A DNA stretch of 64,000 nt. It comes from Ascoidea asiatica JCM 7603 (taxonomy: Eukaryota > Fungi > Ascomycota). Positions 3,648-64,000 of this stretch are shown in pieces. The DNA lies in NCBI GenBank assembly GCA_001600695.1, contig BCKQ01000003.1:838003-902002 (forward strand), read 5' to 3'. Numbering within the stretch: position 1 is the stretch's first letter; each line of letters begins with the position of its first letter. Under the pieces are notes generated by a model, which had not been told where the DNA came from, ran no database searches, and was given only the letters and a program-made list of their open reading frames with translations. A program made the position numbers and the translations under genes.

Positions 3648-4209
3648 TAATAAACTAATTTCAAATTTATCTTCCTTCAACTTCTTATTTTTTTTTATTT
3701 AATTCTAGGACCCCGATTTAATAATATTATTTTAGGTTAATATCTTTTCTTTTCTCAAGAGAATGAAATTTGTTTAATGTTATTTTAAAAAGAATTCTCA
3801 TTCCAAGGTTTTTATTTCTTCATCTTTTTTTTTGGTTTTTTTTTTGTATTAAAAAAATTTTGAATCTTTTTTTTGTTTATTTTTATATTTTTTTTTTTAA
3901 AAAAAAAATCGAACTATAAACTTAACAGTTAAGATTAATCAAGAAAGATTTAATTTGGGTTTATAGAAATCAATCCTAAGATTTCAGTTTGCTATTATAA
4001 TTTGGAAGTCTTCAATGACTGAAATTGATACTAAAGAAATTTAAATCTTTTCGATCAAAAATAATATATCTGTTACTCTAATATTTGTTGCTCTGATGAT
4101 TTACCCAATGATGAATGATTTTCAAAGATGCCAGTAGGCTAGGCTTTAGGTAGAAGACATTCCAATTAATAACTTACCTTTTCCATAATTCTCTATACTC
4201 TACTTTACA

Positions 4210-4223
4210 CCCCCCCCCCCCCC
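4210..4223 (+). repeat. Poly-C tract (C14)
   Basis: 14 consecutive C in AT-rich intergenic DNA. Confidence 0.9.
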
Positions 4224-4512
4224 TATCTTTTTTTAATTCCATATATTTTTGTATTCTTATTTAGCAAATCCATCTAATTTCTCTTCTTCATTCACTTCGT
4301 CTAGCTCATCTGCTTTATCTACCATATTAATTAACATTATTTCTGTTAAAAGATTCGAAAAGTTTCATTTAATTCACTAGCCTTATATTCCAGCCATAAC
4401 CAGCCACAATATGTTTTTCCCAAAGCATTTCCGTACATTTGGTCTCTTGTTTTTTTTGCGCAAGGCCTTCTCCTCTGTTTAGATCTCGTTTTTGTTCCAT
4501 TATTTTCGTAGC

Positions 4513-4518
4513 ACGCGT
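4513..4518. promoter_or_regulatory. MCB element (ACGCGT) upstream of PWWP gene
   Basis: ACGCGT about 245 nt upstream of ATG 4760; CG-rich hexamer is rare in this background. Single site, function inferred. Confidence 0.4.
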
Positions 4519-4759
4519 CGTTAATAGTTCTTTTTTAATTCACTTAAAATATTTATTCAAATGAAAACAAATTCAGTTATTTTGAATGTTTTTTTTTGAT
4601 TCAATCAAATCAATTGTAATAATTATTCCTTTTTTTTAAAATTAGAAACAGTTAGTTTAATAAAATCTTAATTGATATTTTGAAAATTCTCAGCTTTCAT
4701 TCCGATAAGCTATATATGTTTTTTGGCTTTTATGTTATTTAACTCTTCAAGGAAATTTG

Positions 4760-7207
4760 ATGGATCTGCAACTTTTTGATCATGATTCGTGGATACCAAA
4801 AACTGGAGAAAGAGTTTTATGTCAAGTTCCTGGTTATCCAGCTTGGCCTTCGATGGTATTACCTTTAGATACATTACCTATTCATATTGCTCAAAAGAAA
4901 CCAAAGAGATCAAAAGTACCTTTATATCCAGTAGTATTTTATAATGATCCAACTTTTTATTGGGCGAAAAAACAATATTTAAAATTATTAACAGATTCAA
5001 TAATAAATAATTACATAACGAGAAATAAAAAAGCTAAAAATTTCCAATTATATGAAGCATATGTTGAATCTCTAAAATATCCAACTTTCGAAGATTATTT
5101 GGTGCTTAATGGAGGACAAGAGGATTTAGTTAATCCAGATAATGAATTATTAAATTCAATTAGACAAAGTATAGCGACTGCAAGAAATGAATCAGTGAAA
5201 AAAATTGCTGAATCTGAAAATTATGTTGAGATTCTTGATCCAGATGATTCTGACTCAAATTATTCTGAGAATTCTAACAACCCTGATCATCAAACCGTTA
5301 TAGATCATTATGATCATAACAAGCAAAGTAACGAAAACAATGACTTTGATGATGATGATGATAATAATGATTCAAACTCCCCTTTATTTAAATCATTCAA
5401 CGATGTATTATTAGATGACGAATATTTCGAAAATGAAAGGCAGATAGAAGAGCAGATTAAGAACCAAAAGCAATTATTAAATGAGGATGATAATGAATCT
5501 GATACTGATTCTAATACAGATACCGATAATCAAGGTTCAAATAAAAATAAAAATAAAAATAAAAATAAAAATGAAAGTGAAAGTGAGTCTGAATATGAAT
5601 ATGAAGATGATTCTGATTACAAAAATAGAAATGTAGAAAAAACTAGAAGTAGAAGCAGAAGCAAAAACGGTAGACTTTTAAAACTCCGTGCTATATCAAG
5701 AAAAGCTAAACAGACTAAGCAAACAGTAAAAAAGAAAAAAATATTAGAAAGTGATTTAGAAAATGAAATTGAAAATGAAATTGTATCAGATAATGCGCCT
5801 TCAAGTAAAACATCAGATAATACAGTTAATGATACAATAATTTCAAGTCCAAATATATCTAAAAATAATATTTCAAAAAGTAAATCCCTAGTTTTAAGAA
5901 AAAAAACATCTAATCAGCTATCTAGAATAAAAACTAAAAACAAAGTAACAAAAGAAGACGTTGCAACTCCTGAAGAATTGAGACTTTTAGAAGAAGAAAA
6001 TGAGTTTGAAAATAAAATCTGGATTCCATTAATTGGCAATAGAGTTGCCTGTAAAGTTCCAACTTATCCTGCCGCTCCTGGTATGATTATACCCTTGAAA
6101 CTCCTTCCATTATCAGTCATGAAAGAAATTCCACCAAATTTAACACTTGATGAAGTTTTCCCAGTATCATTTTACAATGAAACCACTTATTATTGGGCTC
6201 AACGATATGAATTAAATTTACTATCTGATACAAAAATTGATGTATTTTTAAGGATTCAAAAGAAAAAAAATTTTGGGACAAAATCAAAATCAAATTTGGA
6301 TTTAATTTCTGCTTACTTGCAAGCAAAAGAATATAAAACTTTAAGTGAATTTATAACTTTAAAAAATTTTGATACCGAGAAGCTTTTAGACCAAGATCCT
6401 GAAAAAATAAATAGGTATGAAGCAAATGTTAGATTACAGGAATCGAACATTCATCCAATTACAATTGAGAAAAAGCCTACAATTGCTACTCAAACTGATT
6501 TACTCACTGATGTAAATAATATTCTGCAAAGTTATAATATTCCAATAGCGGCTACACCTTTAACAACTCTGGTAGTTTCTCAACAGAATACCGAAATTCC
6601 AAATAGCTCAATATCATCACAAAGCCAAATGGTCAACAGTTATCGAAATTTATTTGGTAATATCAATGATCCCAAAAAAAATAATGTATTTAACAATTCA
6701 GGCTTGACAACTCCTTTGCCTCTATATTCTCTTCAGGTTCCTATAGTAAATAATTCCGAAAATAACTACAAATTACCACTTGAAGACTCTTCATTGAATG
6801 TAGCGAGTGGAGTAAAAGTCAAAAACGAATACATCAAAGTTCAGATCCCAAAAGAAAATGAAAGCTCCAATAAATATTCTAAGCCAAACCCACATGTTAG
6901 GAAGCCAAATAATGGAAAAGGTCGTTCTTTCGGTCCTGTTGACTCTGAAACTTCAGAAGATTCTTCAAATTCATATAAAGAAGCAAGTGATTGGAGAACT
7001 GGCAGTCCTAAAAAGCCTACTATTGGCATTGTAGCTGGAATTATTCCTAAAAGGGATTATGATATAACGCCAACAGTTACATCTAGTTTCGAAGAAGGTA
7101 CTACTACAATTGGAAAGCTCTCATCCACAGGATTATTTAAGCCTCCTGATTTTTATAGACAGTTATCTTATAATCAATCCCCTCCTAACAAAAGAAGAAA
7201 AGTTTAA
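4760..7207 (+). CDS. Tandem PWWP-domain chromatin protein (Pdp3/Ioc4-related), 815 aa
   Basis: First ATG is 4760 (track starts at TTG 4757). Domain 1 GERVLCQVPGYPAWPSMV..VVFYNDPTFYWA..LYEAY; domain 2 GNRVACKVPTYPAAPGMI..VSFYNETTYYWA..LISAY; C-terminal NLS-like PNKRRKV. Confidence 0.8.
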   Translation: MDLQLFDHDSWIPKTGERVLCQVPGYPAWPSMVLPLDTLPIHIAQKKPKRSKVPLYPVVFYNDPTFYWAKKQYLKLLTDSIINNYITRNKKAKNFQLYEAYVESLKYPTFEDYLVLNGGQEDLVNPDNELLNSIRQSIATARNESVKKIAESENYVEILDPDDSDSNYSENSNNPDHQTVIDHYDHNKQSNENNDFDDDDDNNDSNSPLFKSFNDVLLDDEYFENERQIEEQIKNQKQLLNEDDNESDTDSNTDTDNQGSNKNKNKNKNKNESESESEYEYEDDSDYKNRNVEKTRSRSRSKNGRLLKLRAISRKAKQTKQTVKKKKILESDLENEIENEIVSDNAPSSKTSDNTVNDTIISSPNISKNNISKSKSLVLRKKTSNQLSRIKTKNKVTKEDVATPEELRLLEEENEFENKIWIPLIGNRVACKVPTYPAAPGMIIPLKLLPLSVMKEIPPNLTLDEVFPVSFYNETTYYWAQRYELNLLSDTKIDVFLRIQKKKNFGTKSKSNLDLISAYLQAKEYKTLSEFITLKNFDTEKLLDQDPEKINRYEANVRLQESNIHPITIEKKPTIATQTDLLTDVNNILQSYNIPIAATPLTTLVVSQQNTEIPNSSISSQSQMVNSYRNLFGNINDPKKNNVFNNSGLTTPLPLYSLQVPIVNNSENNYKLPLEDSSLNVASGVKVKNEYIKVQIPKENESSNKYSKPNPHVRKPNNGKGRSFGPVDSETSEDSSNSYKEASDWRTGSPKKPTIGIVAGIIPKRDYDITPTVTSSFEEGTTTIGKLSSTGLFKPPDFYRQLSYNQSPPNKRRKV

Positions 7208-16210: not shown

Positions 16211-17637
16211 CTTCAAAAGACTTGTGGTCAGAAAGTGGACAAGCAGTGAAATCCAAAAAGAGGGTAACATTTAGGGAAAGCAGGAGTCGGTGTAATTTGC
16301 AGTGTCTTTGCATGACTGAGCAGCTACATTTGTTTTTGTTTTCAGGACCTTTCTTTTCGGGACTGCGCGGCTTGATTTTTATGTGTTCAAGAAGTTTTAA
16401 ACAATTGTTTTTTTTTTTCGTTTTGACTGGATAGAGAGCTGTGATTGGTCAGATTCCCCTTTTAATCGCTGAGTTTGTGAATATATAAAAATATATGTTT
16501 GTGTATATTTTATATTTAGTCTTTAATCTATAGTAATGACAATGAAAGTGATATGAAACTTTATAGAATTCCCTAAAGGATTAGATATAAATTCATGATG
16601 TGAGAGTTAAAACAAAAAAATTATCACTTTATTTTTGAAATTAATCCTTTTTTCTCCACAGAGATGTTATTTTTTTATCTGATAGCCAGCCAGTAAAAGA
16701 AAGTGTAAGAGAATACAAAAAACAAACCGATTTTTCTTTAATCAAACTATCAGTTAGTCAGTGAAAATACTTTATCTGCACATACGAACTTATAAAAAAC
16801 ATTGATTATCCAATGTTGATCGATGAGATGACAACTATTTTTGTGAAAAAAAAAAACTAAAATTTTTTATAAAAATACGTAATCGTTTTAATTAATTCAA
16901 AAATATCTTAAAAATCTCAAATTAAAAACAGAATCATCAGAAACCAAAAAGAACTCTTTGAAGTAAATTTTTTTAATTTTCGGAAAAAAAAAAGGTGTTT
17001 CAAAAATTTAAAAGATTTTTATATTTAAAAAAGGGTTAAATTTTATTTATTTATTTAGAAAGCTTTATAAATATACGGCTACTAAAATTATTTATCAATT
17101 CTTTTTTGGTAAATAAGATTCTTTTTATAAATAAAACATCAAAAATATAAAAAAAATAAAAATTGAATTGTACGATCTCAAATGAATCTTCAGAATTCAC
17201 TGAGATTGTGATTCAATTGATTTTTAAGAGCTAAAAAGATCGAGATTTTGAGACTGAGATTGAGAAGGTAAGAATCAAGGGCCGGATAGCAGGGGGCTGG
17301 AATCGGTACTGCTGTAAATTTATGGATACGACTTAATAATAATCTTCTCTGTGAAGTTCATTGGCCCAAACAGGGAAGCCCTCTCGTAGCCGGACCCCTG
17401 GCGGTACGAAACCGTATGCCCTCATCGCTGTGAGCACGGACTGCAGCCCTCCAATTGGCTGGGTGCCCGCTGCGCTGCTCCCACTCAAAATCCTTGTTTG
17501 TCTTTGTCTTGCACCAATTTTATTTTTAAAAAAAAAAAAAAAAAAACAGTCACATGACTGGTAACTTTTTTTATTATAATCCACAGAACTGGAACTGTAA
17601 TCGGATATGAATCCAGTTTTATGGGTCTTCAAAATAA

Positions 17638-25123: not shown

Positions 25124-28100
25124 TTTTTTTTAATAATGATAAATTATAATAGAGAATGACAAAATTTAACTTAAAATACAAAATGTAAATAAATTTAAAT
25201 TATATTTATGATAAAATTAAAGAAAATATATGGATATAGATAGATTATATGGAAGAAAGAAAGAAAGAAAGTATTTAAAGATTAGTAGATTTAAATGAAT
25301 AAGTATTATCAGTAATTATTAGAGTATTTGATATATATTATAAATAGGATAATGAATATGATAATGAATATGATATTGAATATGATATTGAATACAGTAA
25401 AATTTAAAATAATAAAAGGATTATTTTAAATTGAGAAGGAAAAAATGTATTGATAAAATAAAAAAGAAAATGAGTATTAATATGGCTTACAATTAATATA
25501 TTATAAAAAAACAGAGAGAATATCTCAGTAATTAGTGTAGTAAGAAATAGAAATTTAGTGTATTGAGTTAAATAGTTGAGTAAATTAGATCAATGTATTG
25601 AAATATTATTATTATTATGATTGATATTGATAGTGATAATGGAAAACAAACAAATTGAATTCAAAAAGCATGAATAGTAAGTAATAATTAATTAATAGTT
25701 AATTAATAATTAATTGTTAATAGGCTATTTGAATTTATGATTAAATAAATAAATGAATATTCAAATATTTAAAAAAAATAGTTGAAAAAAGATTAAAAAT
25801 ATGCTGAAAAGAAGAAAATAAGTTGAAAATAATTTGAAAATAAATTAAAAAAAAGTGGAAAAAACCTTGAGAATACTAATGAATATGATACTGGCAAGTT
25901 TAATTAGAAACCTGATTGAGAATAATACAAGAATTAGAATTAGAATGAGAATAAATGAAAGAATAAGAGTAAAAATGAAAATAAAAGGCAAATAAGCAAA
26001 TATTATTATTATTAGTATTATTATTAGTATTAGTATTAGTATTAGAATTTTATTTCAAAATTATTTCATAATTATTTCATTATTATTTTATTATTCTTAG
26101 CCTGCAAAAGTATCACAATCTGTTGCAATATTCATCCATATGAATTAGCGTCAGGAGTTAAGGCACGCGGACTGTAGCACCTCAGCGTGGGAACCTGGAA
26201 ACTGGGCCCTGCAAAATGCCCCAGGCTGCTCGGGACCCCAAAAAGCCCAGGTGTCCCAAGGACACAATGGCCCAATTGCCCAATGACCGCTTCTCTAGAC
26301 ACAGTTGCTATTCAAAGATTGTTGTTCCCGCGACTCGGTTTCCCGTCGGTGGGCGCGGGAAAAGAAACTTTAACTGACAACGGTGGGTGTATTTAAAAGC
26401 GGGTCAATGTAAAAAATGCTTTTACTTCGGAACACAAAATTATCGGAAACCTGAACCCAAATATGTGCTACAGTAACCTGGGCAGTACCACAGGAAGGAG
26501 CACAGTATCAAAGTGGATTAATCAGCTCGTACCATTCACATTGCTTCTTCCTATCACTCCCTATCAATTTACTTCAATCTTTAAATCCAATACCAGAGTA
26601 GTCATGTCTTGAAGTACTGCTGTCTGGAAGTATTGTGCTGTCTTTGTGTCTCGATGAATTGATATCATTTACAAACAAAAAAGAAGTATTTTTAAAACAA
26701 TTTCATTTTCAATGACTGTTACTCAGTTGTAGAGTTTTTTGGGGTTGATTTTTGTTATTCAACATTCCAGTATTTGTATGGTTGCAATAATCCCCATTTC
26801 TGCCTCATTTTTTTTTTTTTTTTTTGAATCCAGGAACTTCTGGCTTGCAAACATGAAATTTTTTTTTAATCTCTGTAGAGATATAAAAAAGCATTCTTTT
26901 TCAAAATTCTGTTTCAACCCAGATGAAATTAAATACTAGGAAGGATAAATCATTTATTAATGTACCAGGATATAAGTCTTAAATGGGTTTCTTGGGCTTT
27001 TTTCGCTATTTAAATACTCCATGTTCTATGGTATGATTTCAAGATTATACTCAATAAAACACAATAAAAGCGCTAATTTGAATCATCTTTACCACACACT
27101 AAAATATAAAATATAAAATTCAACATAAATAAAAATAAGGTTGAAACACCAATCTTATGTGCACCTAATAGATCAATTTGTTATTATCCTCAACACTGAG
27201 TTTACAGTTTTTCCACTTATCAAAGCTGAGATAAGCCATCAACCACCGGTTTTCACCGAGCCTTGCTGGCATTTTTGATTTTTCTGAGTTCGATTAAGTT
27301 TGATTGGGAATTTATTTTGGTGATATTTTAATTTAATTTTGCCTACAAAATCCATTCCATTTTTTTAATTTGGTTTTTCGGGTCTGTTTTACATAATTGC
27401 GGGTTTGTATACCCCAGAAACATTCTGATGAAGTCACAGTCACGTGAAATACACGGATCTATAATTTTGATTTTGTAGAGCCGTATCCGGAAGATGTATC
27501 ACATGACTTGCATTTCTTGGTGCCAAGAAGCACGGGTGCTGTTGCAAAGACAAAGACGAAGGCAGGGTGACTGCTTCCAACCGAGGGAGTGTTGCTGGGC
27601 TTGCTTGGTCCGGCTTGCTCTGGCTGCAATCCGTGGGATCTTCGTAATTTCTCCGGCTTATCCAATCAATTAATAAAATATTCCACGTGTTTTAGTAATA
27701 TAGAATGAAATGTATTAACATTTTGTCTTCTTTTTTTATTTTGTTTAGTTTTTAAAAATCGTGAAACCCTTTATAATCAGTATTTTATTTTATAAACTAA
27801 ATGATATAACTTTTTTATAAATTCCTTTATCTACCGTGGGCCTAAGTCTAGGGGTTAAACAAAATTAATGCTCATCATGAAATAAAATGGATTTAGCGAT
27901 AAAGGTTAAATAATTACTGATACTGAAATTGATATTGATATTAATTTATTGATGATTAACTGGTTTATTAGTTTAAACAACTGAATAAAAAATTTATTGT
28001 TTTTTTTTTATTCAATAAAATATTTCTCAATTTATTAATATATTTAATTAAAGGACTCAAAGTTTTTAATAGATTTAATAAAATATTCGAGCAAGCAAAT

Positions 28101-34449: not shown

Positions 34450-34530
34450 CCTTTAAAGTTATGAAAAAAATTAAAGGCATTTTTGAAAAAGAATGAAACG
34501 ATGAAAGTTTGCTGTGAGAAATGTTAGCAA

Positions 34531-34666
34531 GGCTGGTTGGGGCTGGTTGGGGCTGGTTGGGGCTGAGGAAGGTGTTGGGGTGCACGCTCAGGCAGTGCTT
34601 TTGGACCGGTTCTTGGGAGGTTTGGGGTTTAGGGGGGTTGGGAGGTTTAGGGGGATTTAAAGGGGT
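34531..34666 (+). repeat. G-rich tract: (GGCTGGTTGG)x3 followed by six G3-G6 runs
   Basis: Direct reading; 34615-34665 GGGAGGTTTGGGGTTTAGGGGGGTTGGGAGGTTTAGGGGGATTTAAAGGGG. Confidence 0.85.
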
Positions 34667-35074
34667 TAACTACGGATAACAATGGAAAAAGTTACGGATT
34701 ATATAAGCATGATGTTTAGAGACCGCTTTTATGGAACTTCTTGTACATGCAAAGAAACGTATTTAGCTGTCTTTTGCCGTTGACTTGGCATTTCCTTGCA
34801 GTACCCAGATTTTCAAATTATTTTTATATAACTTTATTCATTACTACTGTACTACTGTACTTTTATTTATTATTCAATGATGATTTTTTATTTAAATTTA
34901 TTTAAATTACATAAAATAAAATGATTTTTAAGGAGAAAGAGAAGAAAAGTATTGTTATTATAATATAGCGGAACACTTCAATATATATGAAGGATATGAT
35001 GTTTATAGATGTAAGAAAAAAGAAATGAAATTTAATGAAATGATTATTAATTTTTTTTTTTAGTTTTTTTTATG

Positions 35075-36913: not shown

Positions 36914-37344
36914 TCTCAAAATATATATATATATATATATATACTATATATTGTATATGATATATATTATATGATTTTGATACATATAGATTTAAATATA
37001 TATCAATCTATCAATATATATATGAGATATGAGATATTATTACTTTTTAGTATTATTTTATAAATTATATTGATAATATTAGTATTATTATTAACATCTT
37101 TATTATATTAACAACAGAGTTATACTCCTAATATATATAATATATATAATATATATAATATATAATGATATTATTATATCATTGTTTTAGCATAGTCTCG
37201 TTATTATATCACTGATATTTTGGTAGTGTTTCTATTGTTTTATTGTTTTATTATGGCAGTTGGAAGCCAGCGGGATTGAAATAGGACAAAGAAGAGCAAC
37301 AAAAGAAGCAAAAGAAGGAAGAGCCCAGTCCTAGCTGAGCCCGG

Positions 37345-37465
37345 GCTGCGTCTGGCTGCGTCTGGCTGCATCTGGCGATTTTGGAGGTTTTGTGTTTGTG
37401 TTCTGGTGGTTTTGGTGCGTGTGGTGCGTGTGGTGTTGGAAGTGGTTGGTGGTTGGTGGTTGGTG
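37345..37465 (+). repeat. GC/GT-rich short tandem repeats (GCTGCGTCTG x3; TGGTGCGTG x2; TGGTTGG x3)
   Basis: Direct reading, in the divergent intergenic region between the WD40 gene and the microprotein gene; followed by GTCACGTG near 37481. Confidence 0.75.
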
Positions 37466-37930
37466 ACTGTGGGGAATCCAGTCACGTGTGGGTGGGTCAC
37501 TGTGTTTCCTAATTGATATAATCATAACTAGATAATTAGATATTTAGGTAATTAGGTAATTAGTTATTTAGTTAATTAGTTGATATTTGATACGTTACAA
37601 AAAAAAGCAGGAAGAGAATCTTCAAGTTGGGAAACAAATAAATAAATCTACTGATTGTGGAGTGAAGAAGTGAATGAAGAAGTGAAGAATCATTCACCAA
37701 CTATTACTAACAATCACTTGATGCACTCCTTCAATACAATACAATACAATACAATCAATTCTCTCTCTTCTTTCTCTTCTTTCTCTTCTCCAGGTTTATT
37801 CAATTGACTTATTCAATTGACTTAATTCAAATTCCAGGTGTAAAAACGCCGTTTGGATACTTTGAATGTTTGAAACCTGGGGAAGGCCAGATGTTCAATC
37901 ATTGAATATATGAAGAATTCATTGAATATC

Positions 37931-37969
37931 TTAAGAAATCTTAAGAAATCTTAAGAAATCTTAAGAAAT
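37931..37969 (+). repeat. Tandem repeat (TTAAGAAATC)x4
   Basis: Direct reading. Confidence 0.85.
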
Positions 37970-38398
37970 GTGTTATTTCATAAATGAATATTCAATTATT
38001 TCAGTTATTTTCAAATCTTCAATTTTACCAGTTTACCAGTTTATCATTTATCATTTATCATTTATTTTACCTTTTACCTTTTACTTTTTACTTTTTCATT
38101 TTACATTTTACATTTTACTATCAATACTATTATTAGTTAATACTAAATATACTACTATACTAAATATACTATTATACTATTATACTATTATACTATTATA
38201 CTATTATACTGTTTATTTAATATTTATATAAATATGGGGTAAATTCTTCCTTTTTATATCCATATCCATACAATCTATCAATCTATCAATCTATCAATCT
38301 ATCAATTTATCATTATATCTTATATCTCATATTATATATTATATATTATATTATATTATATTATACTATCATTCTCTCACTTCATATCATATATCAAA

Positions 38399-38696
38399 AT
38401 GGTAAGTAACTAATCATATATATCAATATAATATATATCAATATAATATATATCAATATAATATTACTTAATCAATCAATTTTACTAACAATATAATTAA
38501 TTTAATTAATTTTTTATTTATTTAGTCTGGTTTAAAAAAATGTCTTTTATGTGAACAAAATTTTCCTGAAATTGGTATTAATAAAATTGGTTTATGTTTT
38601 GGTTGTTCAGGAATTTATTTTAGAGAAATGCAAAGTCCATTAGCTGATAGATATAAATTAATTTCAAAATTAAAAGGTAAAGGTAAATTTAAATAA
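38399..38696 (+). CDS. Spliced 57-aa Cys4 (CxxC-x14-CxxC) basic microprotein; exon1 38399-38401 (ATG only), exon2 38526-38696
   Basis: CAAAATG|GTAAGT, TACTAAC at 38483-38489, TTTAG at 38521-38525. Product MSGLKKCLLCEQNFPEIGINKIGLCFGCSGIYFREMQSPLADRYKLISKLKGKGKFK; codon choice (GGT, TTA, TGT, GAA, AGA) matches the housekeeping genes here. Confidence 0.85.
38402..38525 (+). other. Spliceosomal intron directly after the start codon, 124 nt
   Basis: Consensus GTAAGT / TACTAAC / TAG, with no AG between branch point and acceptor. Confidence 0.9.
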
Positions 38697-39197
38697 TCTA
38701 TTATATTATAATCAATCTATTATATTATATATCTATATTATATCAATGTTAATGTTAATGTCAATGTTTTATATCTATATCTATATTTATCTTTTAATTA
38801 CATCTTTGCTATTTCATTAACTATTTCATTAACTATTTCATATATTATCATTATCATTTAATTCATTCTTTATCTATTCATTTAGTTATTCATTTAGTTA
38901 TTCATTTAATAAACTTCATTTCTTTTTATATCATTCTCACTCGTCATTATAATTACTGTAATTAATGATTGATTGAAGAATAAAATTATTTAATAAAAAT
39001 AAAAAATATTTATAGTCACGTGCATATTAAACTAGAGCCTTAACACTGGACCGCTGGCTTTTATCAAGAATTTAATTAAATATTCCTTTATATTTGTTTA
39101 TCTATTATTTATATCTTATTTGTTTATTTATTTATTTATCTATCTTCATTCAATTCAATTCAATTCAATTCAATTCAATCAATTCATTATATTCAAA

Positions 39198-40052
39198 ATG
39201 ACAAATGATATCTCAAATAATAACAATTCAAATGACAATAAAGATGATAATGAATTAAATGAAATTTTAAAAGATCAATTATTAGATTCTTCTCGTTTAG
39301 ATAATTTAGATTTACTTAATTCAATTTTTAAAAAATTAAATAATAATAATTTAAAAATTTCAAATTTAATTAATTCAACTTTTGATACTTTTGGTAATAC
39401 TCCTTTACATCTTTCAATAAAATATGGTAGTTTTCAAATCTTAGATACAATCTTAGATTTTGAAAATATAGAAATTGATCCAAAAAATAAAATTAATTAT
39501 GAAACTCCATTACATTTCTCAATTTATTATTTATTTAATATTACTGATAACTTTAATAATAATAATAACAAAAAAGATATTTTGGAACTTGAAGATAAAT
39601 TAAATTTTGGTAAATTATTACTTGAAACTTTAATTGAATCAGGTTCAGATCCAAGAATTAAAAATAAAAATAATGAAAAATCAATAGATTTAATTTATTT
39701 AAAATTTCCAAATTTATTATCAAAAAATTTTAATAATAAAATTATTTTAAATTTTCAAGAAAATTTTTATTTAAATTTAATAAATTATTTAAAAAATTCT
39801 GAATTACAATTTATTCAAGAAGAATCTATACAATTTTTAGAAAAAAAATCTTCATTAAATTCAATTACCAATAATAATAATAATAATAATAATAATGATA
39901 ATAATATAATTCCAGATGAATTTAAACAAAATATTTCAAATTCAGATTCAAATTCAGATTCAAATTCAGCTTCAGATTCTGATGATGAAAATGATATTGA
40001 TGATCCAAATATTCAAAATTTATCAAATAATACTAAAAAATTATCAATTTAA
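39198..40052 (+). CDS. Ankyrin-repeat protein, YGL242C-like, 284 aa
   Basis: First ATG 39198. LKDQLLDSSRLDNLDLL, FGNTPLHLSIKYGSFQILDTILD..IEIDPKN..ETPLH, GSDPRIKNK; acidic tail; adjacent to KAP114 as in S. cerevisiae. Confidence 0.85.
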   Translation: MTNDISNNNNSNDNKDDNELNEILKDQLLDSSRLDNLDLLNSIFKKLNNNNLKISNLINSTFDTFGNTPLHLSIKYGSFQILDTILDFENIEIDPKNKINYETPLHFSIYYLFNITDNFNNNNNKKDILELEDKLNFGKLLLETLIESGSDPRIKNKNNEKSIDLIYLKFPNLLSKNFNNKIILNFQENFYLNLINYLKNSELQFIQEESIQFLEKKSSLNSITNNNNNNNNNDNNIIPDEFKQNISNSDSNSDSNSASDSDDENDIDDPNIQNLSNNTKKLSI

Positions 40053-40305: not shown

Positions 40306-43300
40306 TTAAATAATCTCTTTGGCTAAAATTGTTTTTTCTTCATCATTTAATTTCTCATAATATTTCTTAATTCTATTATTATTTTCTTTATTCTTAAAAC
40401 ATTCTTTAAAAAATTCAATTAAAATTTCTTTTATACTACGTTTATCTTTTATTTTATTTCTTTTTATTCCATTTATTTCATATTCCCCTTCTTCATAATC
40501 ACTATCATCATCACCATAATCATCATCATCTTCATCTGTTCTTTCTATTTCCATTTCTCGTTCTCCATCAACTTCTTCAACTACATTTTCATAATCTGAA
40601 ATATATTTCCTTAATTTATCAAATGTTGGAACTCCAATATCTTCAATATCTTCCCATCCATCTTCATCTTTACTTTCATCATTTTCATTTTCATTCTCAG
40701 TTTCATTTATTTCATCTTCCATTTTACCAATTATAAAATCATTTGGATCTGGTTGTTGAGTTTCAAATTTTAATTCTGATATAAATAATTTTAAAATTTT
40801 TATATTTCCATTTATTTTTTCATATTTTAATGGATGTTTTTTACTTATTGATCTTGTAATAATTAAATTTGGATCTAATCCTTGATCTTTTAATAAATCT
40901 CCATCAAAATAAATTTTTTCAATTCTTAAATCTTCAAGTAAAAAAATTTTACCTAATGCTAATATATTTTTTTTTAATTTTTCTTTACCTGAAATACTTG
41001 AAAAAATTTCAAACCATGAATTTAAAACAATTTCTAATCCATTTTTATAAAATTCATTATTATTTAAAAAAAATTTTATTTTTATATCATATAAAATATT
41101 TATAATTTCATTTGTTGAAATTAAAATTAAATTACAAAAAACTAAAATTAAATTTTCTTTAATTAAAATTTCTTTACAAATTGATAATCTTTTAATAATT
41201 AATTCAATAATTATAAAATAATATTCATTAAGATAATTACCAAGTTTATTTATTATTGAATTTATAATTATTCCACTAAATTTTGCTGCAGAATCTGATA
41301 ATTCAATTAAAAGAAATTTTTGTATACATTTTAAAAGAATTTCAATTCCTGAATTATTTCTTAAAAAATCTTTATATTCAATAAAATAATTTGAATTTGA
41401 ACTTATTAATATTGAATTTAAAACTTCACTACTTGTTTGTAAAATTTGATCATCAATATTATCTAATAAAATTAAATTAATTAATTTTGGAAATATAAAT
41501 TTAAATACATCATTTGGTAATTCTTTATTTGGACAATATTTTATAAAACTATTAATTAATTCTAATGAAAAAATTAATTCTGAAGAATATTCACATGAAT
41601 TTGAATAATTTTTAATATTTTCATTAATAATTTCAATTAAAATTGGTAATCCAAATTCTGCTTGTTTTAAATATTGTTGTAAAGAAATTCCTTTTAAAAA
41701 AATTTTTAAAACATTTTTTGCATCTTCAATTATTGTTAAATTACTAAAATCTATTGCAGAAATTTTAAAAATTAATTTAATTATTGTATCATTTAATCTT
41801 GCAGTTTCAAAATTAATTTTTATTAATGGTGTTAAACTTTCCATTAAAATTGTTGGTGTATCATCTGTTGAAGAATCTAATAAATCAGAAATAATTGATA
41901 AAATCATTTCTTGATATGTTGAAGATATTTGAAGTTTATCAAATTCTAAAATATTATTATAAAATGATAAAGCAATTAAAGTTGATGATCTAACTAAGTT
42001 AACTTTATTTTTAATATCATCATCTTCATCATCATCTTCTTCTTCTCTAGAATTATTATTATGATTTTCATTTAAATATTTATGTAAATTAAATGAAGTT
42101 TCAATTGAGATAGTAAATGAATGTATAATTAATTCTTTATTAAGTAAATCTGAGAATCTTTCAATAAATTTAGTTATAAGAAGTAAACTTCTAGAAATAA
42201 TAAATGGATTTTCATTAATTTGAATATTAACAACAAATTTATATAAATCATTAAAAGTTATATTCATTTCAGTAAATTTTAAAAGTAAATCTTCAGGCTC
42301 TTCATCATCAACAAAATCATTAATAAATAAACCTTGTAAGATTGATAAAATAGATTCTTTAATTAAATAATAATTATTTTTTGAAAGTATTTGAAAACAT
42401 GGTAATGAATTATTTATAATAGATAAATTTTGAAATGAATTTAATTTTGAATTTTCTAAAAAATTTAAACCATTTATAGAAAAAGATAAATATTTAAATG
42501 AATCAAAAGAATTTAATTCTGATAAATATTCATTAATTGAATCTCTAACATTATAATCAACACTCATTCCAGATTCTATTGTTACAAAAGAATTGAAATT
42601 TAATAAATAATCTTCAATTGTATCATTTGGATAAATATTAAAAATTACAATTGAATTAAATAATTTCAATAATAAATCATCATTTTTGAATTTATTTTCA
42701 GCAGAAGGATCAGATAATGAATTATCACTAACACAAGTTAAGAATTGAAAAATTTGAATTAATAACTTACTTAAAGATTGATCATCAGAATCAATTGAAG
42801 TAGAATGTGAGGAAGAAGAGGAATTAATAATTGAGTAATCTGAATTTGAATTTGAATTTGAATTTGAATTTGAATTTGAATTTGAAATATTTAAATTAGA
42901 AGGATCTATTGATTGTTTATAGTAAAATAATGTTAAAGAAGATAATTGATTGATTGCCAATGGAATTAATTCTGGATAATAATGTTTTAATTTAAAATAA
43001 TTGACTAAAGATACTAAAATTTTATAAAATTGTTCAGCTAATTTTAAATAATCTAATTCTAAGATTTTATTTGAAATTGTATAATTGTATAAATCATTTA
43101 ATAAAGATATTAATAATTTCATTATTTGAACAACAGTTGATTGAACAAAATTTTTTCTTTTTTTATTATTATTTGATTCAGAAGATTGAAATTGTTTTAA
43201 ACAATTTTCTAAAAATTTTGAAGCTTCAATTTTTACATTAAGAGAAATTTGATTATTTGATTGTGATAAAAGATTAATACAATAATTAATTGTATTTAAA

Positions 43301-43824
43301 CCAACGGAACCTTCATAAAATTGTTCATCAGTTATTATATCATCAAAAATATTTGTTAAAACTATTAAACCACCAAGTAATGAATTTTCATTACAATTTG
43401 AATTTGATAAATCTATAAAAGAGTATAATATATTTAATAAATCTGGCCATTCATCAGGATAATCAACAACAGCAATTTGAGAAATACAATAAGCAGAAGA
43501 ACTTTTAATTTTACTATCATTATCAATTAATAAATTTAATAATTGAGATCTAATAATTTTTTTAATATTTTGATTTATTGGATTACCTTTAAAAGATACA
43601 AACCCAATTGACCAATAATATGGAACTAGTCTTTTTAAATTTAATAAAGCACTTTGTCTATTTGATATTAATTGATTTAAATCAGAAGCAATATTAATTA
43701 AAGCTAAAGAAATATTGGAAGGATCATTTGAAGAAATTTCTTTAAAATTTGATTCAGCTTGAGAACGAATTGAGTTATCTGGATTTTGAGTATTTATAAG
43801 AATATCTAAAATTGTTGAGTCCAT
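40306..43824 (-). CDS. KAP114: Importin-9 family karyopherin Kap114, 1172 aa
   Basis: IBN_N domain (NPDNSIRSQAE..RQSALLNLKRLVPYYWSIGF), IAVVDYPDEWPDLL, HEAT repeats, GDL..IITRS and DEDGWEDIED C-terminal motifs. Confidence 0.9.
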   Translation of the reverse strand: MDSTILDILINTQNPDNSIRSQAESNFKEISSNDPSNISLALINIASDLNQLISNRQSALLNLKRLVPYYWSIGFVSFKGNPINQNIKKIIRSQLLNLLIDNDSKIKSSSAYCISQIAVVDYPDEWPDLLNILYSFIDLSNSNCNENSLLGGLIVLTNIFDDIITDEQFYEGSVGLNTINYCINLLSQSNNQISLNVKIEASKFLENCLKQFQSSESNNNKKRKNFVQSTVVQIMKLLISLLNDLYNYTISNKILELDYLKLAEQFYKILVSLVNYFKLKHYYPELIPLAINQLSSLTLFYYKQSIDPSNLNISNSNSNSNSNSNSNSDYSIINSSSSSHSTSIDSDDQSLSKLLIQIFQFLTCVSDNSLSDPSAENKFKNDDLLLKLFNSIVIFNIYPNDTIEDYLLNFNSFVTIESGMSVDYNVRDSINEYLSELNSFDSFKYLSFSINGLNFLENSKLNSFQNLSIINNSLPCFQILSKNNYYLIKESILSILQGLFINDFVDDEEPEDLLLKFTEMNITFNDLYKFVVNIQINENPFIISRSLLLITKFIERFSDLLNKELIIHSFTISIETSFNLHKYLNENHNNNSREEEDDDEDDDIKNKVNLVRSSTLIALSFYNNILEFDKLQISSTYQEMILSIISDLLDSSTDDTPTILMESLTPLIKINFETARLNDTIIKLIFKISAIDFSNLTIIEDAKNVLKIFLKGISLQQYLKQAEFGLPILIEIINENIKNYSNSCEYSSELIFSLELINSFIKYCPNKELPNDVFKFIFPKLINLILLDNIDDQILQTSSEVLNSILISSNSNYFIEYKDFLRNNSGIEILLKCIQKFLLIELSDSAAKFSGIIINSIINKLGNYLNEYYFIIIELIIKRLSICKEILIKENLILVFCNLILISTNEIINILYDIKIKFFLNNNEFYKNGLEIVLNSWFEIFSSISGKEKLKKNILALGKIFLLEDLRIEKIYFDGDLLKDQGLDPNLIITRSISKKHPLKYEKINGNIKILKLFISELKFETQQPDPNDFIIGKMEDEINETENENENDESKDEDGWEDIEDIGVPTFDKLRKYISDYENVVEEVDGEREMEIERTDEDDDDYGDDDSDYEEGEYEINGIKRNKIKDKRSIKEILIEFFKECFKNKENNNRIKKYYEKLNDEEKTILAKEII

Positions 43825-59611: not shown

Positions 59612-61063
59612 TAATAATGCAATATTTAAATTATCTTTTAATTTTTAATATTTTTTATATTTGAATTATATATTGATATTGATATTGATATTGATATTGG
59701 TGATGTTCGAATTACAGTATATTGAAAAAGTAGATAGCAAAGAGTCGATTTGAATCCTAGATTTAATATTTTGGAATGTATTCTAATTAATATTTTATTA
59801 TTTTGATGTATTGGATTATATTCTTTTATTCAAAAGTATGATGATGATGATATATTATTTGATGTTTATTATCTATTACTATCATTATCATTATCATTAT
59901 CATTATCATTATCATTATCTTTATCGTATTGCCTTATTACTATTACTACTATTATCAAGTATCCTGATCTGGTTAATCTAATCTTTCTTAATTTTTCCTT
60001 GATCTTTCTTTGTCTGCTGTCTGATCACTGCCTTTTCTTACCAATTGGCTGTATTCTGGTCTATTGTTCCCCGGGCGGTGGCAAGTGTCCCGTTTAGCCA
60101 GGGCGGCTCCATCCCTTCAGCTGCGTGCGGGTCTCCCCGTCTGGCCCCATGCTCCTTCTCCTGCGGGTCGACTGCACGGGTGTGCAGTCGTGCAGTCGTG
60201 CAGTAATAAACTGATCATGTGGCTGAGACAACTCGCAATTCCACAGATTCACAAGCAGCAGAACCAGCAGCAGAACCATCTTCTTTTAATTCTTCATTAT
60301 CTTCATTATCATCAGCAAAAAGATCACATAATTTTATACTTTTTAATAACATATTCTTATTCTTATTCTTATTATTCTTATTATTCTTATTATTCTTATT
60401 ATTATTATTTTTATTAATATTATATCTTTTAGTAGCCATTATTCTTATCTTTATCTATTTTATTTCCATATATTTTATCTTTATCTATTTTATATTATTT
60501 GTTTTTTTTAGCATATATCAATTTCAATTTCAATTTCAATTTCAATTACAAATACAAATACAATTTCAATTACAAATACTTTTGTAATACTCTTTTGTGG
60601 TTGTCGGGTATAGCTTAAACCAATTTATTAACTTAACCTATATCCGATTACCATCTGGGTGGATTCAATAACATTTTAAATTTTAGATCCAATTTTAGAG
60701 TCAGATTTGAATTTCTATTTTTTGCCCAAGAAAATTCTATTTTAAGCCGTGTTTGAATACATCGGTAAGTCGCAAACTGCATAATCTGGGGATTATTTTA
60801 CATTATACTGTTTCTTTAGGGAATTTTGTTATTATATTACATAGTATCTATAATGTAAAATTATTATGAATGTGGAAATAAGTTTCATTAAAAACAGGGT
60901 TATAACGTGACTACCTTTATATTTGAATTTTAAAAATCAAATATAAAGGTGATTTTCATTTTTTTGATAAATCAATATTGAATTAAATAAGAAAGAGAAA
61001 AGAATAAAGGAAGACAAGAGATAGATTATAGATTATAAATTATAGATTATTAATTATTTTCTA

Positions 61064-62731: not shown

Positions 62732-62871
62732 TTATTAAATTCATCATCAGTTTATCATCAGATACTTTGTATATATATATTATTACTTCTTTCCCATACT
62801 GTACATTATTTCCTATATTATAAAGTAACAAGAATTTTATCAGTGTTTTATTACTGTTGTTTATTATTTTC

Positions 62872-63275
62872 TGGGCGAGACCAAGTCTGTGGGAGCCGTC
62901 GCAGGCAGGTTTTGAACTAGATCCGGTGCATCCTTGACTGCGGATGTGTCTGCTGACCACAGAATACAATCCGATAACGGACTGGCCCGGACGTAAGCCA
63001 CCGGGTCACGCTGCCGCAGCAACTGCGCTTTTTGTTGGCGTGGTTACCAAACGCCCAGACGGCCCTCGGAAATACCCTCGGAGATACTAGATGGCTGGCT
63101 TGCCGGGGTGGACTAAAACCAGAAAAATAGCCGTTTACAGCACCTCCCACCGGTACACTTACCTCGAGTCTACTTTTCACTATGCAAAAGTCTGGCCGGA
63201 GTGTCACATGTTCTGTTTTTTTGGCTGGCTGTCGGTTCCCAGCACGCTTGGCTTAGAAACAGCCTGCGCTGGTTT
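62872..63275. promoter_or_regulatory. GC-rich CGG-dense island, probable UAS of a gene beyond the window end
   Basis: Sharp GC rise; direct repeat CCCTCGGAAATA/CCCTCGGAGATA near 63063-63088; GTCACATG near 63203; followed by an AT-rich leader-like stretch. Confidence 0.45.
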
Positions 63276-64000
63276 AGAAATTGAGGAATCTTTTTAAGCT
63301 CAATCTGCATTTATATTTTTATTTTACTGGTTTTGAATCAAATATATTCAATTATATTCAATTATATTCAATTATATTCAAATATAATCAAATATATTCA
63401 AATATTTTCAATCTTTTCAGTAAATTATGGCGAATCAAATCCAAATTCATGTCAATTTAATTACAAATGCGATTTAATGGCTTTCCAAATATTATTTAAA
63501 CTTTTATTCTATTAAACATACTTTTTACTCCTGACTTTAACTTACTTAATTTAAATAATAAAATTTAAAGGTAACTTTTTAATAATTTCATTTCTTTAAT
63601 AATTAAAACTAAAATTACAATGGCTAGCTATTTTTTAAATTATAAATCTTAAATGTTAAATCTTATAAATTAATAAGGCTGAACGAACGTTTTGAAAAGA
63701 AAAGGAACTAATTTTTTCTTGCCTCTTTTTTTTTTTTTTTCAAATTACAATTCTTAAAATATACTCCATGAATTATTCATTTATTTCAATTAATCAATTA
63801 CAATTCCTAGAATATTTTATAAATTATATTCAATATCTCAATTACTTTTCCAAATTAAGCAAGCATTTTATTCTTCTTTATTTTAATCTCGTCTATTATA
63901 CTTTTCTTTCTTACATCAATCAATCAATCAATCAATCAATAATATATCTCAATCTTTTAATCAATTATATCCATTTCTTCAACTCATTCATATTCTAGAT

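What the first reader, a model, noticed from the sequence alone, without database searches (positions are those of the whole stretch)
38399..38696. Hidden spliced gene for a 57-aa CxxC-x14-CxxC zinc-finger microprotein
Seen: an ATG-only first exon in strong context (CAAAATG), a consensus intron (GTAAGT/TACTAAC/TAG) and a 171-nt exon with host-like codon usage embedded in low-complexity AT sequence. It is below the ORF track cut-off and needs splicing, so annotation pipelines would tend to miss it. Product MSGLKKCLLCEQNFPEIGINKIGLCFGCSGIYFREMQSPLADRYKLISKLKGKGKFK has four Cys and a Lys-rich tail. Knowledge: the Cys spacing equals that of ribosomal uS14/S29 (C-x2-C-x14-C-x2-C then FRE), and ATG-proximal introns are typical of highly expressed yeast genes, but the rest does not match S29, Rpb12 or A20 fingers as I recall them. 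Inference: an unassigned treble-clef-type nucleic-acid or protein-binding microprotein.
Basis: partly seen in the sequence, partly recalled or inferred. Interest (0 to 1): 0.85.

Follow-up and report, generated by a model that had tools for sequence, protein, structure and literature searches.

The report
Conserved spliced zinc-finger microprotein gene
This is a real, spliced yeast gene for a 57-residue four-cysteine zinc-finger protein that is kept almost unchanged between two distant Ascoidea-type yeasts; its counterpart is already annotated as "uncharacterized" in Ascoidea rubescens, and its function is unknown.

Summary

**A real gene.** Ascoidea rubescens has a syntenic ortholog, ASCRUDRAFT_75649 (59 aa, "uncharacterized protein"). 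It has the same ATG|intron layout, all four Cys and an identical C-terminal tail. Exon 2 is 81-85% identical in protein. The three neighbouring genes are 37-49% identical and RPS29 is 73%. Synonymous sites are saturated (pS 0.86, pN 0.17), and the antisense frame carries a stop in both species. So the gene is not hidden everywhere: one pipeline already calls it.

**Family.** No family could be assigned from Pfam, a PDB sequence search, an exhaustive HMMER search of 1.84 billion representatives, or four fold searches. The AlphaFold model (pLDDT 85-90 for residues 1-30) shows a treble-clef-like knuckle plus helix, followed by a basic tail modelled at low confidence.

**uS14/eS29.** The resemblance is spacing only. 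It fails profile tests, and a genuine RPS29 lies elsewhere in the genome.

**Best reading.** A strongly constrained zinc microprotein known only from Ascoidea so far, probably binding an RNA/RNP or a protein partner (inferred).

No RNA evidence could be obtained. The scan noted this same stretch twice, on this genome only.

The parts
38226..38235 (+). TATA-like element (TATATAAATA), about 165 nt upstream of the ATG; candidate core promoter
   Evidence: Sequence. The best colinear DNA alignment with A. rubescens starts here, and at TATAAATA in L001 about 4779. Weak evidence, because such motifs are common in AT-rich DNA.
38399..38401 (+). Exon 1 coding part: the start codon only, in CAAAATG context
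   Evidence: There is no other ATG between the TATA-like element and this one apart from ATG-GGG-TAA at 38233. A. rubescens also has ATG followed directly by GTATGT.
38402..38525 (+). 124-nt phase-0 intron: donor GTAAGT 38402-38407, branch site TACTAAC 38483-38489, T-rich tract, acceptor TAG 38523-38525
   Evidence: The ortholog has a 67-nt intron at the same position (GTATGT, CACTAAC, CAG). Not confirmed by RNA reads.
38526..38696 (+). Exon 2: 56 codons plus TAA. It encodes the whole protein except the initiator Met.
   Evidence: 85% identical to P0001. pN 0.17 against pS 0.86. It is the only translated conservation in the 2.3-kb interval. The antisense frame has a stop in both species.
38541..38606 (+). 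C4 zinc-finger core: Cys codons at 38541, 38550, 38595 and 38604 (CxxC-x14-CxxC)
   Evidence: all four Cys and the GINKIGLCF loop are invariant. The AF2 model has pLDDT 85-90 here, a hairpin, and a helix starting at the second CxxC.
38649..38693 (+). Basic C-terminal tail (RYKL.SKLKGKGKFK), modelled at low confidence
   Evidence: 14 of its 15 residues are identical in both species. pLDDT is below 50 for residues 37-56.

Best explanation
A single-copy, spliced protein-coding gene: ATG, a 124-nt intron, then a 171-nt exon. It encodes a 57-residue basic microprotein. It is the ortholog of Ascoidea rubescens ASCRUDRAFT_75649, a deposited but uncharacterized protein.

Shown here:
- gene structure, orthology, synteny and the conserved intron position;
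- very strong purifying selection;
- no detectable relative outside these two yeasts.

Predicted, not shown: four invariant Cys hold one Zn in a small treble-clef-like (beta-beta-alpha) knuckle. A short helix and a Lys-rich, probably flexible tail follow.

Inferred mechanism: the zinc knuckle is a rigid recognition module and the conserved basic tail adds electrostatic grip. The protein would then act as a small stoichiometric binder of a conserved macromolecule. An RNA or RNP (ribosome, pre-ribosome or a nuclear RNP) is most likely (about 0.35-0.4). A conserved protein partner is the alternative.

The confidence of 0.75 refers to the gene, the orthology and the zinc-finger nature, not to the target.
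For: Structure and orthology
- Sequence and translation.
- The only database relative is P0001, 59 aa, 85% identical over 93% of the query.
- The A. rubescens gene model spans 247 bp for a 59-aa product, which implies a 67-nt intron directly after the ATG, with GTATGT, CACTAAC and CAG.
- Gene order is the same in both species: a large gene on the minus strand, the microprotein, an ankyrin-repeat gene on the plus strand, and a KAP114 importin on the minus strand.

Selection
- pN 0.166 against pS 0.86. 23 of the 44 identical residues use different codons.
- The microprotein is 81-85% identical, against 37%, 49% and 45% for the three neighbours and 73% for RPS29.
- Only 2 of its 56 residues are Asn, against about 17% Asn in the neighbouring proteins.
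- tblastx finds no other conserved stretch in the interval. The antisense frame is closed in both species.
- The gene is single copy in the 20.3-Mb genome.

Fold
- pLDDT is 85-90 over residues 1-30, with a hairpin and a helix beginning at the second CxxC.
- Every weak structural neighbour is a small zinc module: uS14, FYVE, GATA, FCS, ZAD, the ClpX ZBD, and HNH-type fingers.
- Net charge is about +7, counted.
Against: - There is no transcript, junction or peptide evidence.
- Zinc binding and the fold rest on an AlphaFold model built from only two sequences (mean pLDDT 71, pTM 0.42).
- No structural match is significant: Foldseek E >= 1.8 against the PDB, best VIA Z 3.7.
- The binding target is pure inference from charge, fold class and degree of conservation.
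- The restricted range may be an artefact. Fungal genomes could not be searched at DNA level here, and an ATG-only first exon is easily missed by annotators.
Confidence: 0.75

Rival explanations
1. The microprotein acts through protein-protein contacts. It would be a zinc-stabilised adaptor or dimerisation module, like ZAD domains, the ClpX zinc-binding domain, CsfB or A20/MIU-type fingers, and would regulate or bridge a conserved protein rather than bind nucleic acid.
For: The best rows of the Foldseek-independent search are ZAD domains (Z 3.3-3.7), the Rabex-5 A20 finger plus helix (Z 3.4), CsfB (Z 3.1) and the ClpX ZBD (Z 2.8). FYVE fingers overlay residues 1-35 at 1.1-1.2 A rmsd. Invariant aromatic and hydrophobic surface residues (F13, F25, Y31, F32, Y43) would suit a protein interface.
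Against: All Z scores are below 4, and the tool's own note says that Z under 8 may reflect only a common arrangement. The strongly basic, invariant tail is more typical of nucleic-acid binders. There is no partner candidate and no paralogous domain in the genome that it could mimic.
Confidence: 0.25
2. It is a highly diverged paralog of ribosomal protein uS14/eS29 and serves as an alternative, zinc-containing small-subunit protein.
For: The CxxC-x14-CxxC spacing is the same, and an FRE motif lies nearby. The top Foldseek rows include archaeal, bacterial and eukaryotic uS14 (E 1.8-5, TM 0.42-0.47). This genome's only RPS29 has lost two of its four zinc ligands.
Against: - Pfam Ribosomal_S14 does not match it even at E <= 10. 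The genome-wide PF00253 scan finds only two other loci.
- hhalign against the genome's own RPS29 gives probability 7% and aligns only 13 columns, out of register.
- The invariant eS29 N-terminal block is absent, and FRE is shifted by four residues.
- A. rubescens has a fully Cys-bearing RPS29 and still keeps the microprotein. Cys-poor RPS29 also occurs in Nadsonia, Zygotorulaspora and S. pombe. So there is no co-variation.
Confidence: 0.04
3. It is not lineage-restricted. It would be a member of a wider yeast or fungal microprotein family that is missing from protein databases because the ATG-only first exon defeats gene callers.
For: Conservation at or above the level of a ribosomal protein across a divergence that leaves KAP114 at 45% identity is unusual for a young orphan gene. 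The searches here could see annotated proteins only. The genome tools cover bacteria and archaea only.
Against: The exhaustive HMMER search of 1.84 billion representatives returned only P0001 and repeat artefacts. The PDB sequence search found nothing credible. The metagenome scan found nothing. No yeast protein that I can recall fits; that recollection is not a test.
Confidence: 0.3
4. It is a chance open frame next to chance splice signals, not a gene.
For: The splice-signal pattern alone occurs 1.4 times per strand in shuffled windows. No expression data are available.
Against: The frame, the four Cys, the stop position and the intron position are all conserved in A. rubescens, with saturated synonymous change and pN/pS about 0.19. 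The surrounding 2.3 kb does not align.
Confidence: 0.02

Closest known systems
Ascoidea rubescens DSM 1968 ASCRUDRAFT_75649 (P0001), 59 aa, deposited as 'uncharacterized protein'
   Same: Ortholog. It is 85% identical over the finger and tail, has the same ATG|intron|exon architecture, the same stop position and the same neighbouring genes.
   Different: There are seven variable residues between the Met and the first Cys, against five in the window product. The intron is 67 nt rather than 124 nt. GC content of exon 2 is 38% against 22%. No function is attached to the record.
Ribosomal protein uS14/eS29 (Pfam PF00253)
   Same: A small basic protein with CxxC-x14-CxxC spacing, an FRE motif near the second knuckle and a treble-clef fold class. 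uS14 chains give the weak top Foldseek rows.
   Different: No profile match. It lacks the conserved eS29 N-terminal block, FRE is offset by four residues, and the C-terminus is unrelated. Genuine RPS29 and a mitochondrial uS14-like gene lie elsewhere in the genome.
Small treble-clef zinc modules used for binding or dimerisation (ZAD, ClpX ZBD, CsfB, FYVE and GATA fingers)
   Same: A zinc-knuckle hairpin, with the second CxxC at the start of a helix. Some of these modules also have a following helix, as in this model.
   Different: Z <= 3.7 and sequence identity 11-26%. FYVE needs eight ligands and GATA a 17-18 residue spacer. None of these families is detected by sequence.
Zinc-finger micro-proteins of Haloferax volcanii (C(P)XCG proteins; PMC11241148, PMC10716476)
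   Same: Stand-alone one-domain proteins of under 70 aa with two CxxC pairs and mostly unknown roles. I compared titles and abstracts only.
   Different: They are archaeal, their genes have no introns, and no sequence relationship was found. The comparison is of kind, not of family.

Membership tests
Orthologous group of ASCRUDRAFT_75649 | High sequence identity over the full length | tested here: met
   E 1.9e-21, 85% identity, 93% coverage. 44 invariant columns, including all four Cys.
Orthologous group of ASCRUDRAFT_75649 | Same intron position and conserved gene neighbourhood | tested here: met
   ATG followed directly by a GT intron in both species. The flanking large gene, the ankyrin-repeat gene and KAP114 are in the same order and orientation.
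uS14/eS29 (PF00253 Ribosomal_S14) | Match to the family profile above the curated cut-off | tested here: not met
   No Pfam family at E <= 10. The PF00253 scan of the whole genome hits only C2 and C15, not this locus. hhalign against the genome's own RPS29 gives probability 7%.
uS14/eS29 (PF00253 Ribosomal_S14) | CxxC-x14-CxxC spacing of the eukaryotic and archaeal zinc form | tested here: met
   The spacing is identical. This is the only shared defining feature.
uS14/eS29 (PF00253 Ribosomal_S14) | Invariant N-terminal block (W7, S9, P11, R12, GKGSR) and FRE directly after the second Cys pair | tested here: not met
   The fungal eS29 alignment shows these columns as invariant. The microprotein has only five residues between the initiator Met and the first Cys, and FRE lies four residues after the last Cys.
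Treble-clef zinc-finger fold group | First CxxC in a beta-hairpin knuckle, second CxxC at the N-terminus of a helix | tested here: met
   In the AF2 model the strands are at 3-5 and 12-14 and a helix runs 25-35, starting at the second CxxC. pLDDT is 85-90. This is a prediction from a two-sequence alignment.
Treble-clef zinc-finger fold group | Binding of one Zn by the four Cys | not testable with these tools
   It needs metal analysis of the purified protein. Only the invariance of the four Cys is shown.
GATA zinc finger (PF00320) | CxxC-x17/18-CxxC with the family profile | tested here: not met
   The spacer is 14 residues and there is no Pfam match. AtGATA18 appears only as a weak fold row (E 2.6, Z 2.6).
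FYVE finger | Eight zinc ligands in a cross-brace holding two Zn | tested here: not met
   The protein has only four Cys, and the window product has no His. The Vps27 FYVE sequence match has E 0.92 and pairs Cys that belong to different sites.
ZAD (zinc-finger-associated domain) | C4 treble clef plus a long C-terminal helix forming a homodimer | tested here: inconclusive
   Best VIA rows have Z 3.3-3.7 at rmsd 3.9-4.2 A, within the range of chance arrangements. The homodimer prediction gave no verdict.
HNH / beta-beta-alpha-Me nuclease | Catalytic His in the beta-beta-alpha motif | tested here: not met
   HNH proteins appear among the weak viral and Atlas fold rows. The window product has no His at all, and the single His in P0001 sits at a variable position.

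The most novel reading that the evidence does not exclude
The microprotein is a lineage-specific stoichiometric component of a core RNP machine in Ascoideaceae, for example a new zinc-binding ribosome or pre-ribosome subunit. That would explain why it is conserved at least as tightly as RPS29 although no relative was detected outside these two yeasts.
Probability: 0.1. Interest if true: 0.7.

Novelty: new member of a known kind. Interest (0 to 1): 0.4.

Why it matters
The locus shows that a 57-residue protein behind an ATG-only first exon can be among the most constrained genes in its neighbourhood while having no family, no domain model and no function. If the range really is limited to Ascoidea, this is a tightly constrained, taxonomically restricted zinc protein worth a knockout and a pull-down. 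If exon-aware searches find it across yeasts, it is a systematically missed gene. The practical value is modest. The ortholog is already deposited, and C4 microproteins are a familiar kind.

Tried and rejected
**How the searches were run.** As the operators required, all protein searches used exon 2 by reference (window:38526-38693:+) or the deposited ortholog P0001. The joined 57-aa product (Met plus exon 2) was never submitted anywhere.

**Searches that found nothing useful**
- Pfam: no family at E <= 10.
- PDB sequence profile: only chance rows, namely AMPK, Vps27 FYVE and Rpb9, at E 0.5-1.4. In the FYVE and Rpb9 rows the Cys are out of register.
- Exhaustive HMMER search: apart from P0001, four hits that are repeat or low-complexity artefacts.
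- ESM Atlas by features and by shape: unnamed small proteins and generic zinc modules.
- Foldseek against the PDB and BFVD, and VIA wide: nothing significant.
- Metagenome contig scan: 475 pattern matches, none confirmed.
- Two literature searches found nothing on this protein.
- Rfam and tRNA scans of the surroundings found nothing.

- Complex prediction for a homodimer with Zn: no verdict, score 0.00. This counts neither for nor against dimerisation.

**Ideas rejected**
- Antisense coding: there is a stop in the antisense frame in both species.
- A link between the Cys-poor RPS29 of this genome and the microprotein: the two do not co-vary across species.
- A microProtein derived from a larger paralog: no second match in the genome at E <= 10.

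Full report
**Observation.**
- CAAAATG has its ATG at 38399-38401.
- GTAAGT lies at 38402-38407 and TACTAAC at 38483-38489.
- A T-rich tract ends in TAG at 38523-38525.
- An open frame runs from 38526 to the TAA at 38694-38696.

One search translates exon 2 to 56 residues. It has two CxxC pairs 14 residues apart, FRE four residues after the last Cys, and a Lys-rich end. The acceptor TAG is itself an in-frame stop, and the only in-frame internal ATG would give 22 residues. The finger can therefore be made only from a spliced message.

As the operators required, every protein search used exon 2 by reference or the deposited ortholog. The joined Met-plus-exon-2 product was not submitted anywhere.

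**Is it more than chance?** The signals alone are not. Block shuffles of the window give 1.4 donor/branch/acceptor patterns per strand against one observed. A run of 56 open codons has p about 0.013 at the local base composition. The case rests on comparison with a second species.

**Orthology.** The large protein search returned one relative, P0001. This is Ascoidea rubescens ASCRUDRAFT_75649, 59 aa, deposited as an uncharacterized protein, with E 1.9e-21 and 85% identity.
- Its gene spans 247 bp for a 59-aa product.
- The DNA shows ATG followed at once by GTATGT, then CACTAAC and CAG. That makes a 67-nt intron at the same position as here.
- The neighbours agree in both species: a large gene on the minus strand upstream, an ankyrin-repeat gene downstream on the plus strand, then an importin on the minus strand.
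- The PDB sequence search identifies the importin as KAP114 (E 8e-95).

**Selection.** In the codon alignment, 44 of 56 residues are identical, and 23 of those use different codons. pS is 0.86 (saturated) and pN is 0.166.

| Protein | Identity to A. rubescens |
|---|---|
| Microprotein | 81-85% |
| Upstream gene | 37% |
| Ankyrin-repeat gene | 49% |
| KAP114 | 45% |
| RPS29 | 73% |

- A translated comparison of the whole 2.3-kb interval finds only exon 2.
- The antisense frame that also scored there has a stop in both species.
- The best DNA alignment runs from a TATA-like element through the gene; the other hits are long, roughly 60%-identical matches in AT-rich low-complexity sequence.
- The protein has resisted the Asn enrichment of this proteome: 2 Asn in 56 residues against about 17% in the neighbours.
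- The gene is single copy in the 20.3-Mb assembly.

I take it as a real, strongly constrained protein-coding gene.

**What family?** None that I could find.
- Pfam gives nothing at E <= 10.
- A profile search of all PDB sequences covers yeast cytosolic and mitochondrial ribosomes, polymerases, spliceosomes and Yarrowia complex I. It gives only rows at E 0.5-1.4, and in the FYVE and Rpb9 rows the Cys are out of register.
- An exhaustive HMMER search of 1.84 billion representatives finds P0001 and four repeat artefacts.
- A metagenome scan finds nothing.

The AlphaFold model comes from a two-sequence alignment, with mean pLDDT 71, and 85-90 over residues 1-30. It shows a hairpin carrying the first CxxC and a helix starting at the second CxxC. 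A second short helix and a tail at pLDDT below 50 follow. That is the treble-clef arrangement.

Fold searches return only weak, generic zinc modules:
- uS14, FYVE, GATA, FCS and nuclear-receptor fingers, at Foldseek E >= 1.8;
- ZAD, the Rabex-5 A20 finger, CsfB and the ClpX ZBD, at Z 2.8-3.7;
- HNH-type fingers in the viral and Atlas libraries.

The HNH reading fails because the window product has no His.

**The uS14/eS29 idea.** The spacing is indeed the same, and uS14 chains head the Foldseek list. Homology tests fail, however.
- The Ribosomal_S14 profile does not see the protein.
- A genome-wide scan with that profile finds only two other loci.
- hhalign against the genome's own RPS29 gives 7% probability over 13 columns that are out of register.
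- The invariant eS29 N-terminal block is absent.

One side observation looked suggestive: this genome's only RPS29 has lost the second and fourth zinc ligands (CRIT...CRQA). But A. rubescens keeps CRVC...CRQC and still has the microprotein. Cys-poor RPS29 also occurs in Nadsonia, Zygotorulaspora and S. pombe. The two features do not co-vary, so I dropped the link.

**How it probably works.**
- Shown: gene structure, orthology and constraint.
- Predicted: a Zn(Cys)4 knuckle.
- Inferred: the rigid knuckle and the invariant basic tail (net charge about +7) bind a conserved macromolecule.

I favour an RNA or RNP target (0.35-0.4). The reasons are the charge, the fold class and a level of conservation typical of core-machine subunits. 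A protein-adaptor or dimerisation role is the main rival (0.25). A homodimer prediction gave no verdict and is not evidence either way.

**What is missing.** No fungal genome could be searched at DNA level, because the genome collection holds only bacteria and archaea. The apparent restriction to Ascoidea could therefore be an annotation artefact. I give that about 0.3.

**Novelty and verdict.** It is not new to the databases, since its ortholog is deposited, and it belongs to a familiar kind, the stand-alone C4 zinc microprotein. What stands out is the contrast between very tight conservation and the absence of any detectable family. Interest 0.4. I class it as a new member of a known kind.

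The scan had noted the same stretch twice (s1-627220, s1-627221), on this genome only.

Noticed in passing
L004:1498-1665 (-), = G000 contig C15 about 278093-278260: The genome's only eS29/uS14 gene encodes a protein that has lost two of its four zinc ligands (CRIT...CRQA). A. rubescens keeps CRVC...CRQC. Similar Cys-poor forms occur in Nadsonia, Zygotorulaspora and S. pombe, so zinc loss in eS29 appears to be recurrent in fungi.
   Followed up: partly
window 37211-37560: A GC-rich, G-skewed island (up to 57% GC in a window that averages 24% GC). It has short tandem repeats and a TCACGTG E-box at 37482-37488, and lies between the divergent upstream gene and the microprotein gene. A. rubescens has a larger GC-rich island at the equivalent place (L001 about 4100-4700), also with CACGTG, but the two do not align. 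No Rfam or tRNA match.
   Followed up: partly
window, 17 segments (e.g. 61-340, 17231-17570, 26081-26530, 34451-34750, 59961-60320, 62811-63330): GC-rich islands of 150-540 bp recur every few kb. Eight of the 11 CACGTG sites in the window lie in these islands and two more lie just beside one. This suggests promoter-type islands carrying Cbf1/Pho4-like sites. That is an inference; the positions relative to genes were not tabulated.
   Followed up: no
window 37705-37793 (+): A second TACTAAC is followed by a long CT-rich tract and CAG, with no obvious donor or downstream ORF. It could be a 5'-UTR intron acceptor or chance. It is not conserved with A. rubescens at DNA or translated level.
   Followed up: partly
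window 39198-40049 (+) and 40309-43824 (-): An ankyrin-repeat gene lies next to a KAP114 ortholog, as in A. rubescens. From memory, S. cerevisiae also has an ankyrin-repeat gene (YGL242C) beside KAP114 (YGL241W), which would make this an old gene pair. The S. cerevisiae part was not tested here.
   Followed up: partly
window 37900-38400 and 38700-39180: The intergenic DNA on both sides of the microprotein gene is almost entirely short tandem repeats of 5-12 nt units (for example cttaagaaat, tatactat, atcaatct, ttcaa). The coding exon is the only non-repetitive stretch there.
   Followed up: no
L001 about 5118-5120: The A. rubescens ortholog has one CTG codon, at a position that is not conserved (P-L-E against P-E-I here). 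From memory, Ascoidea decodes CUG ambiguously as Ser or Leu. The window's exon 2 has no CTG.
   Followed up: no
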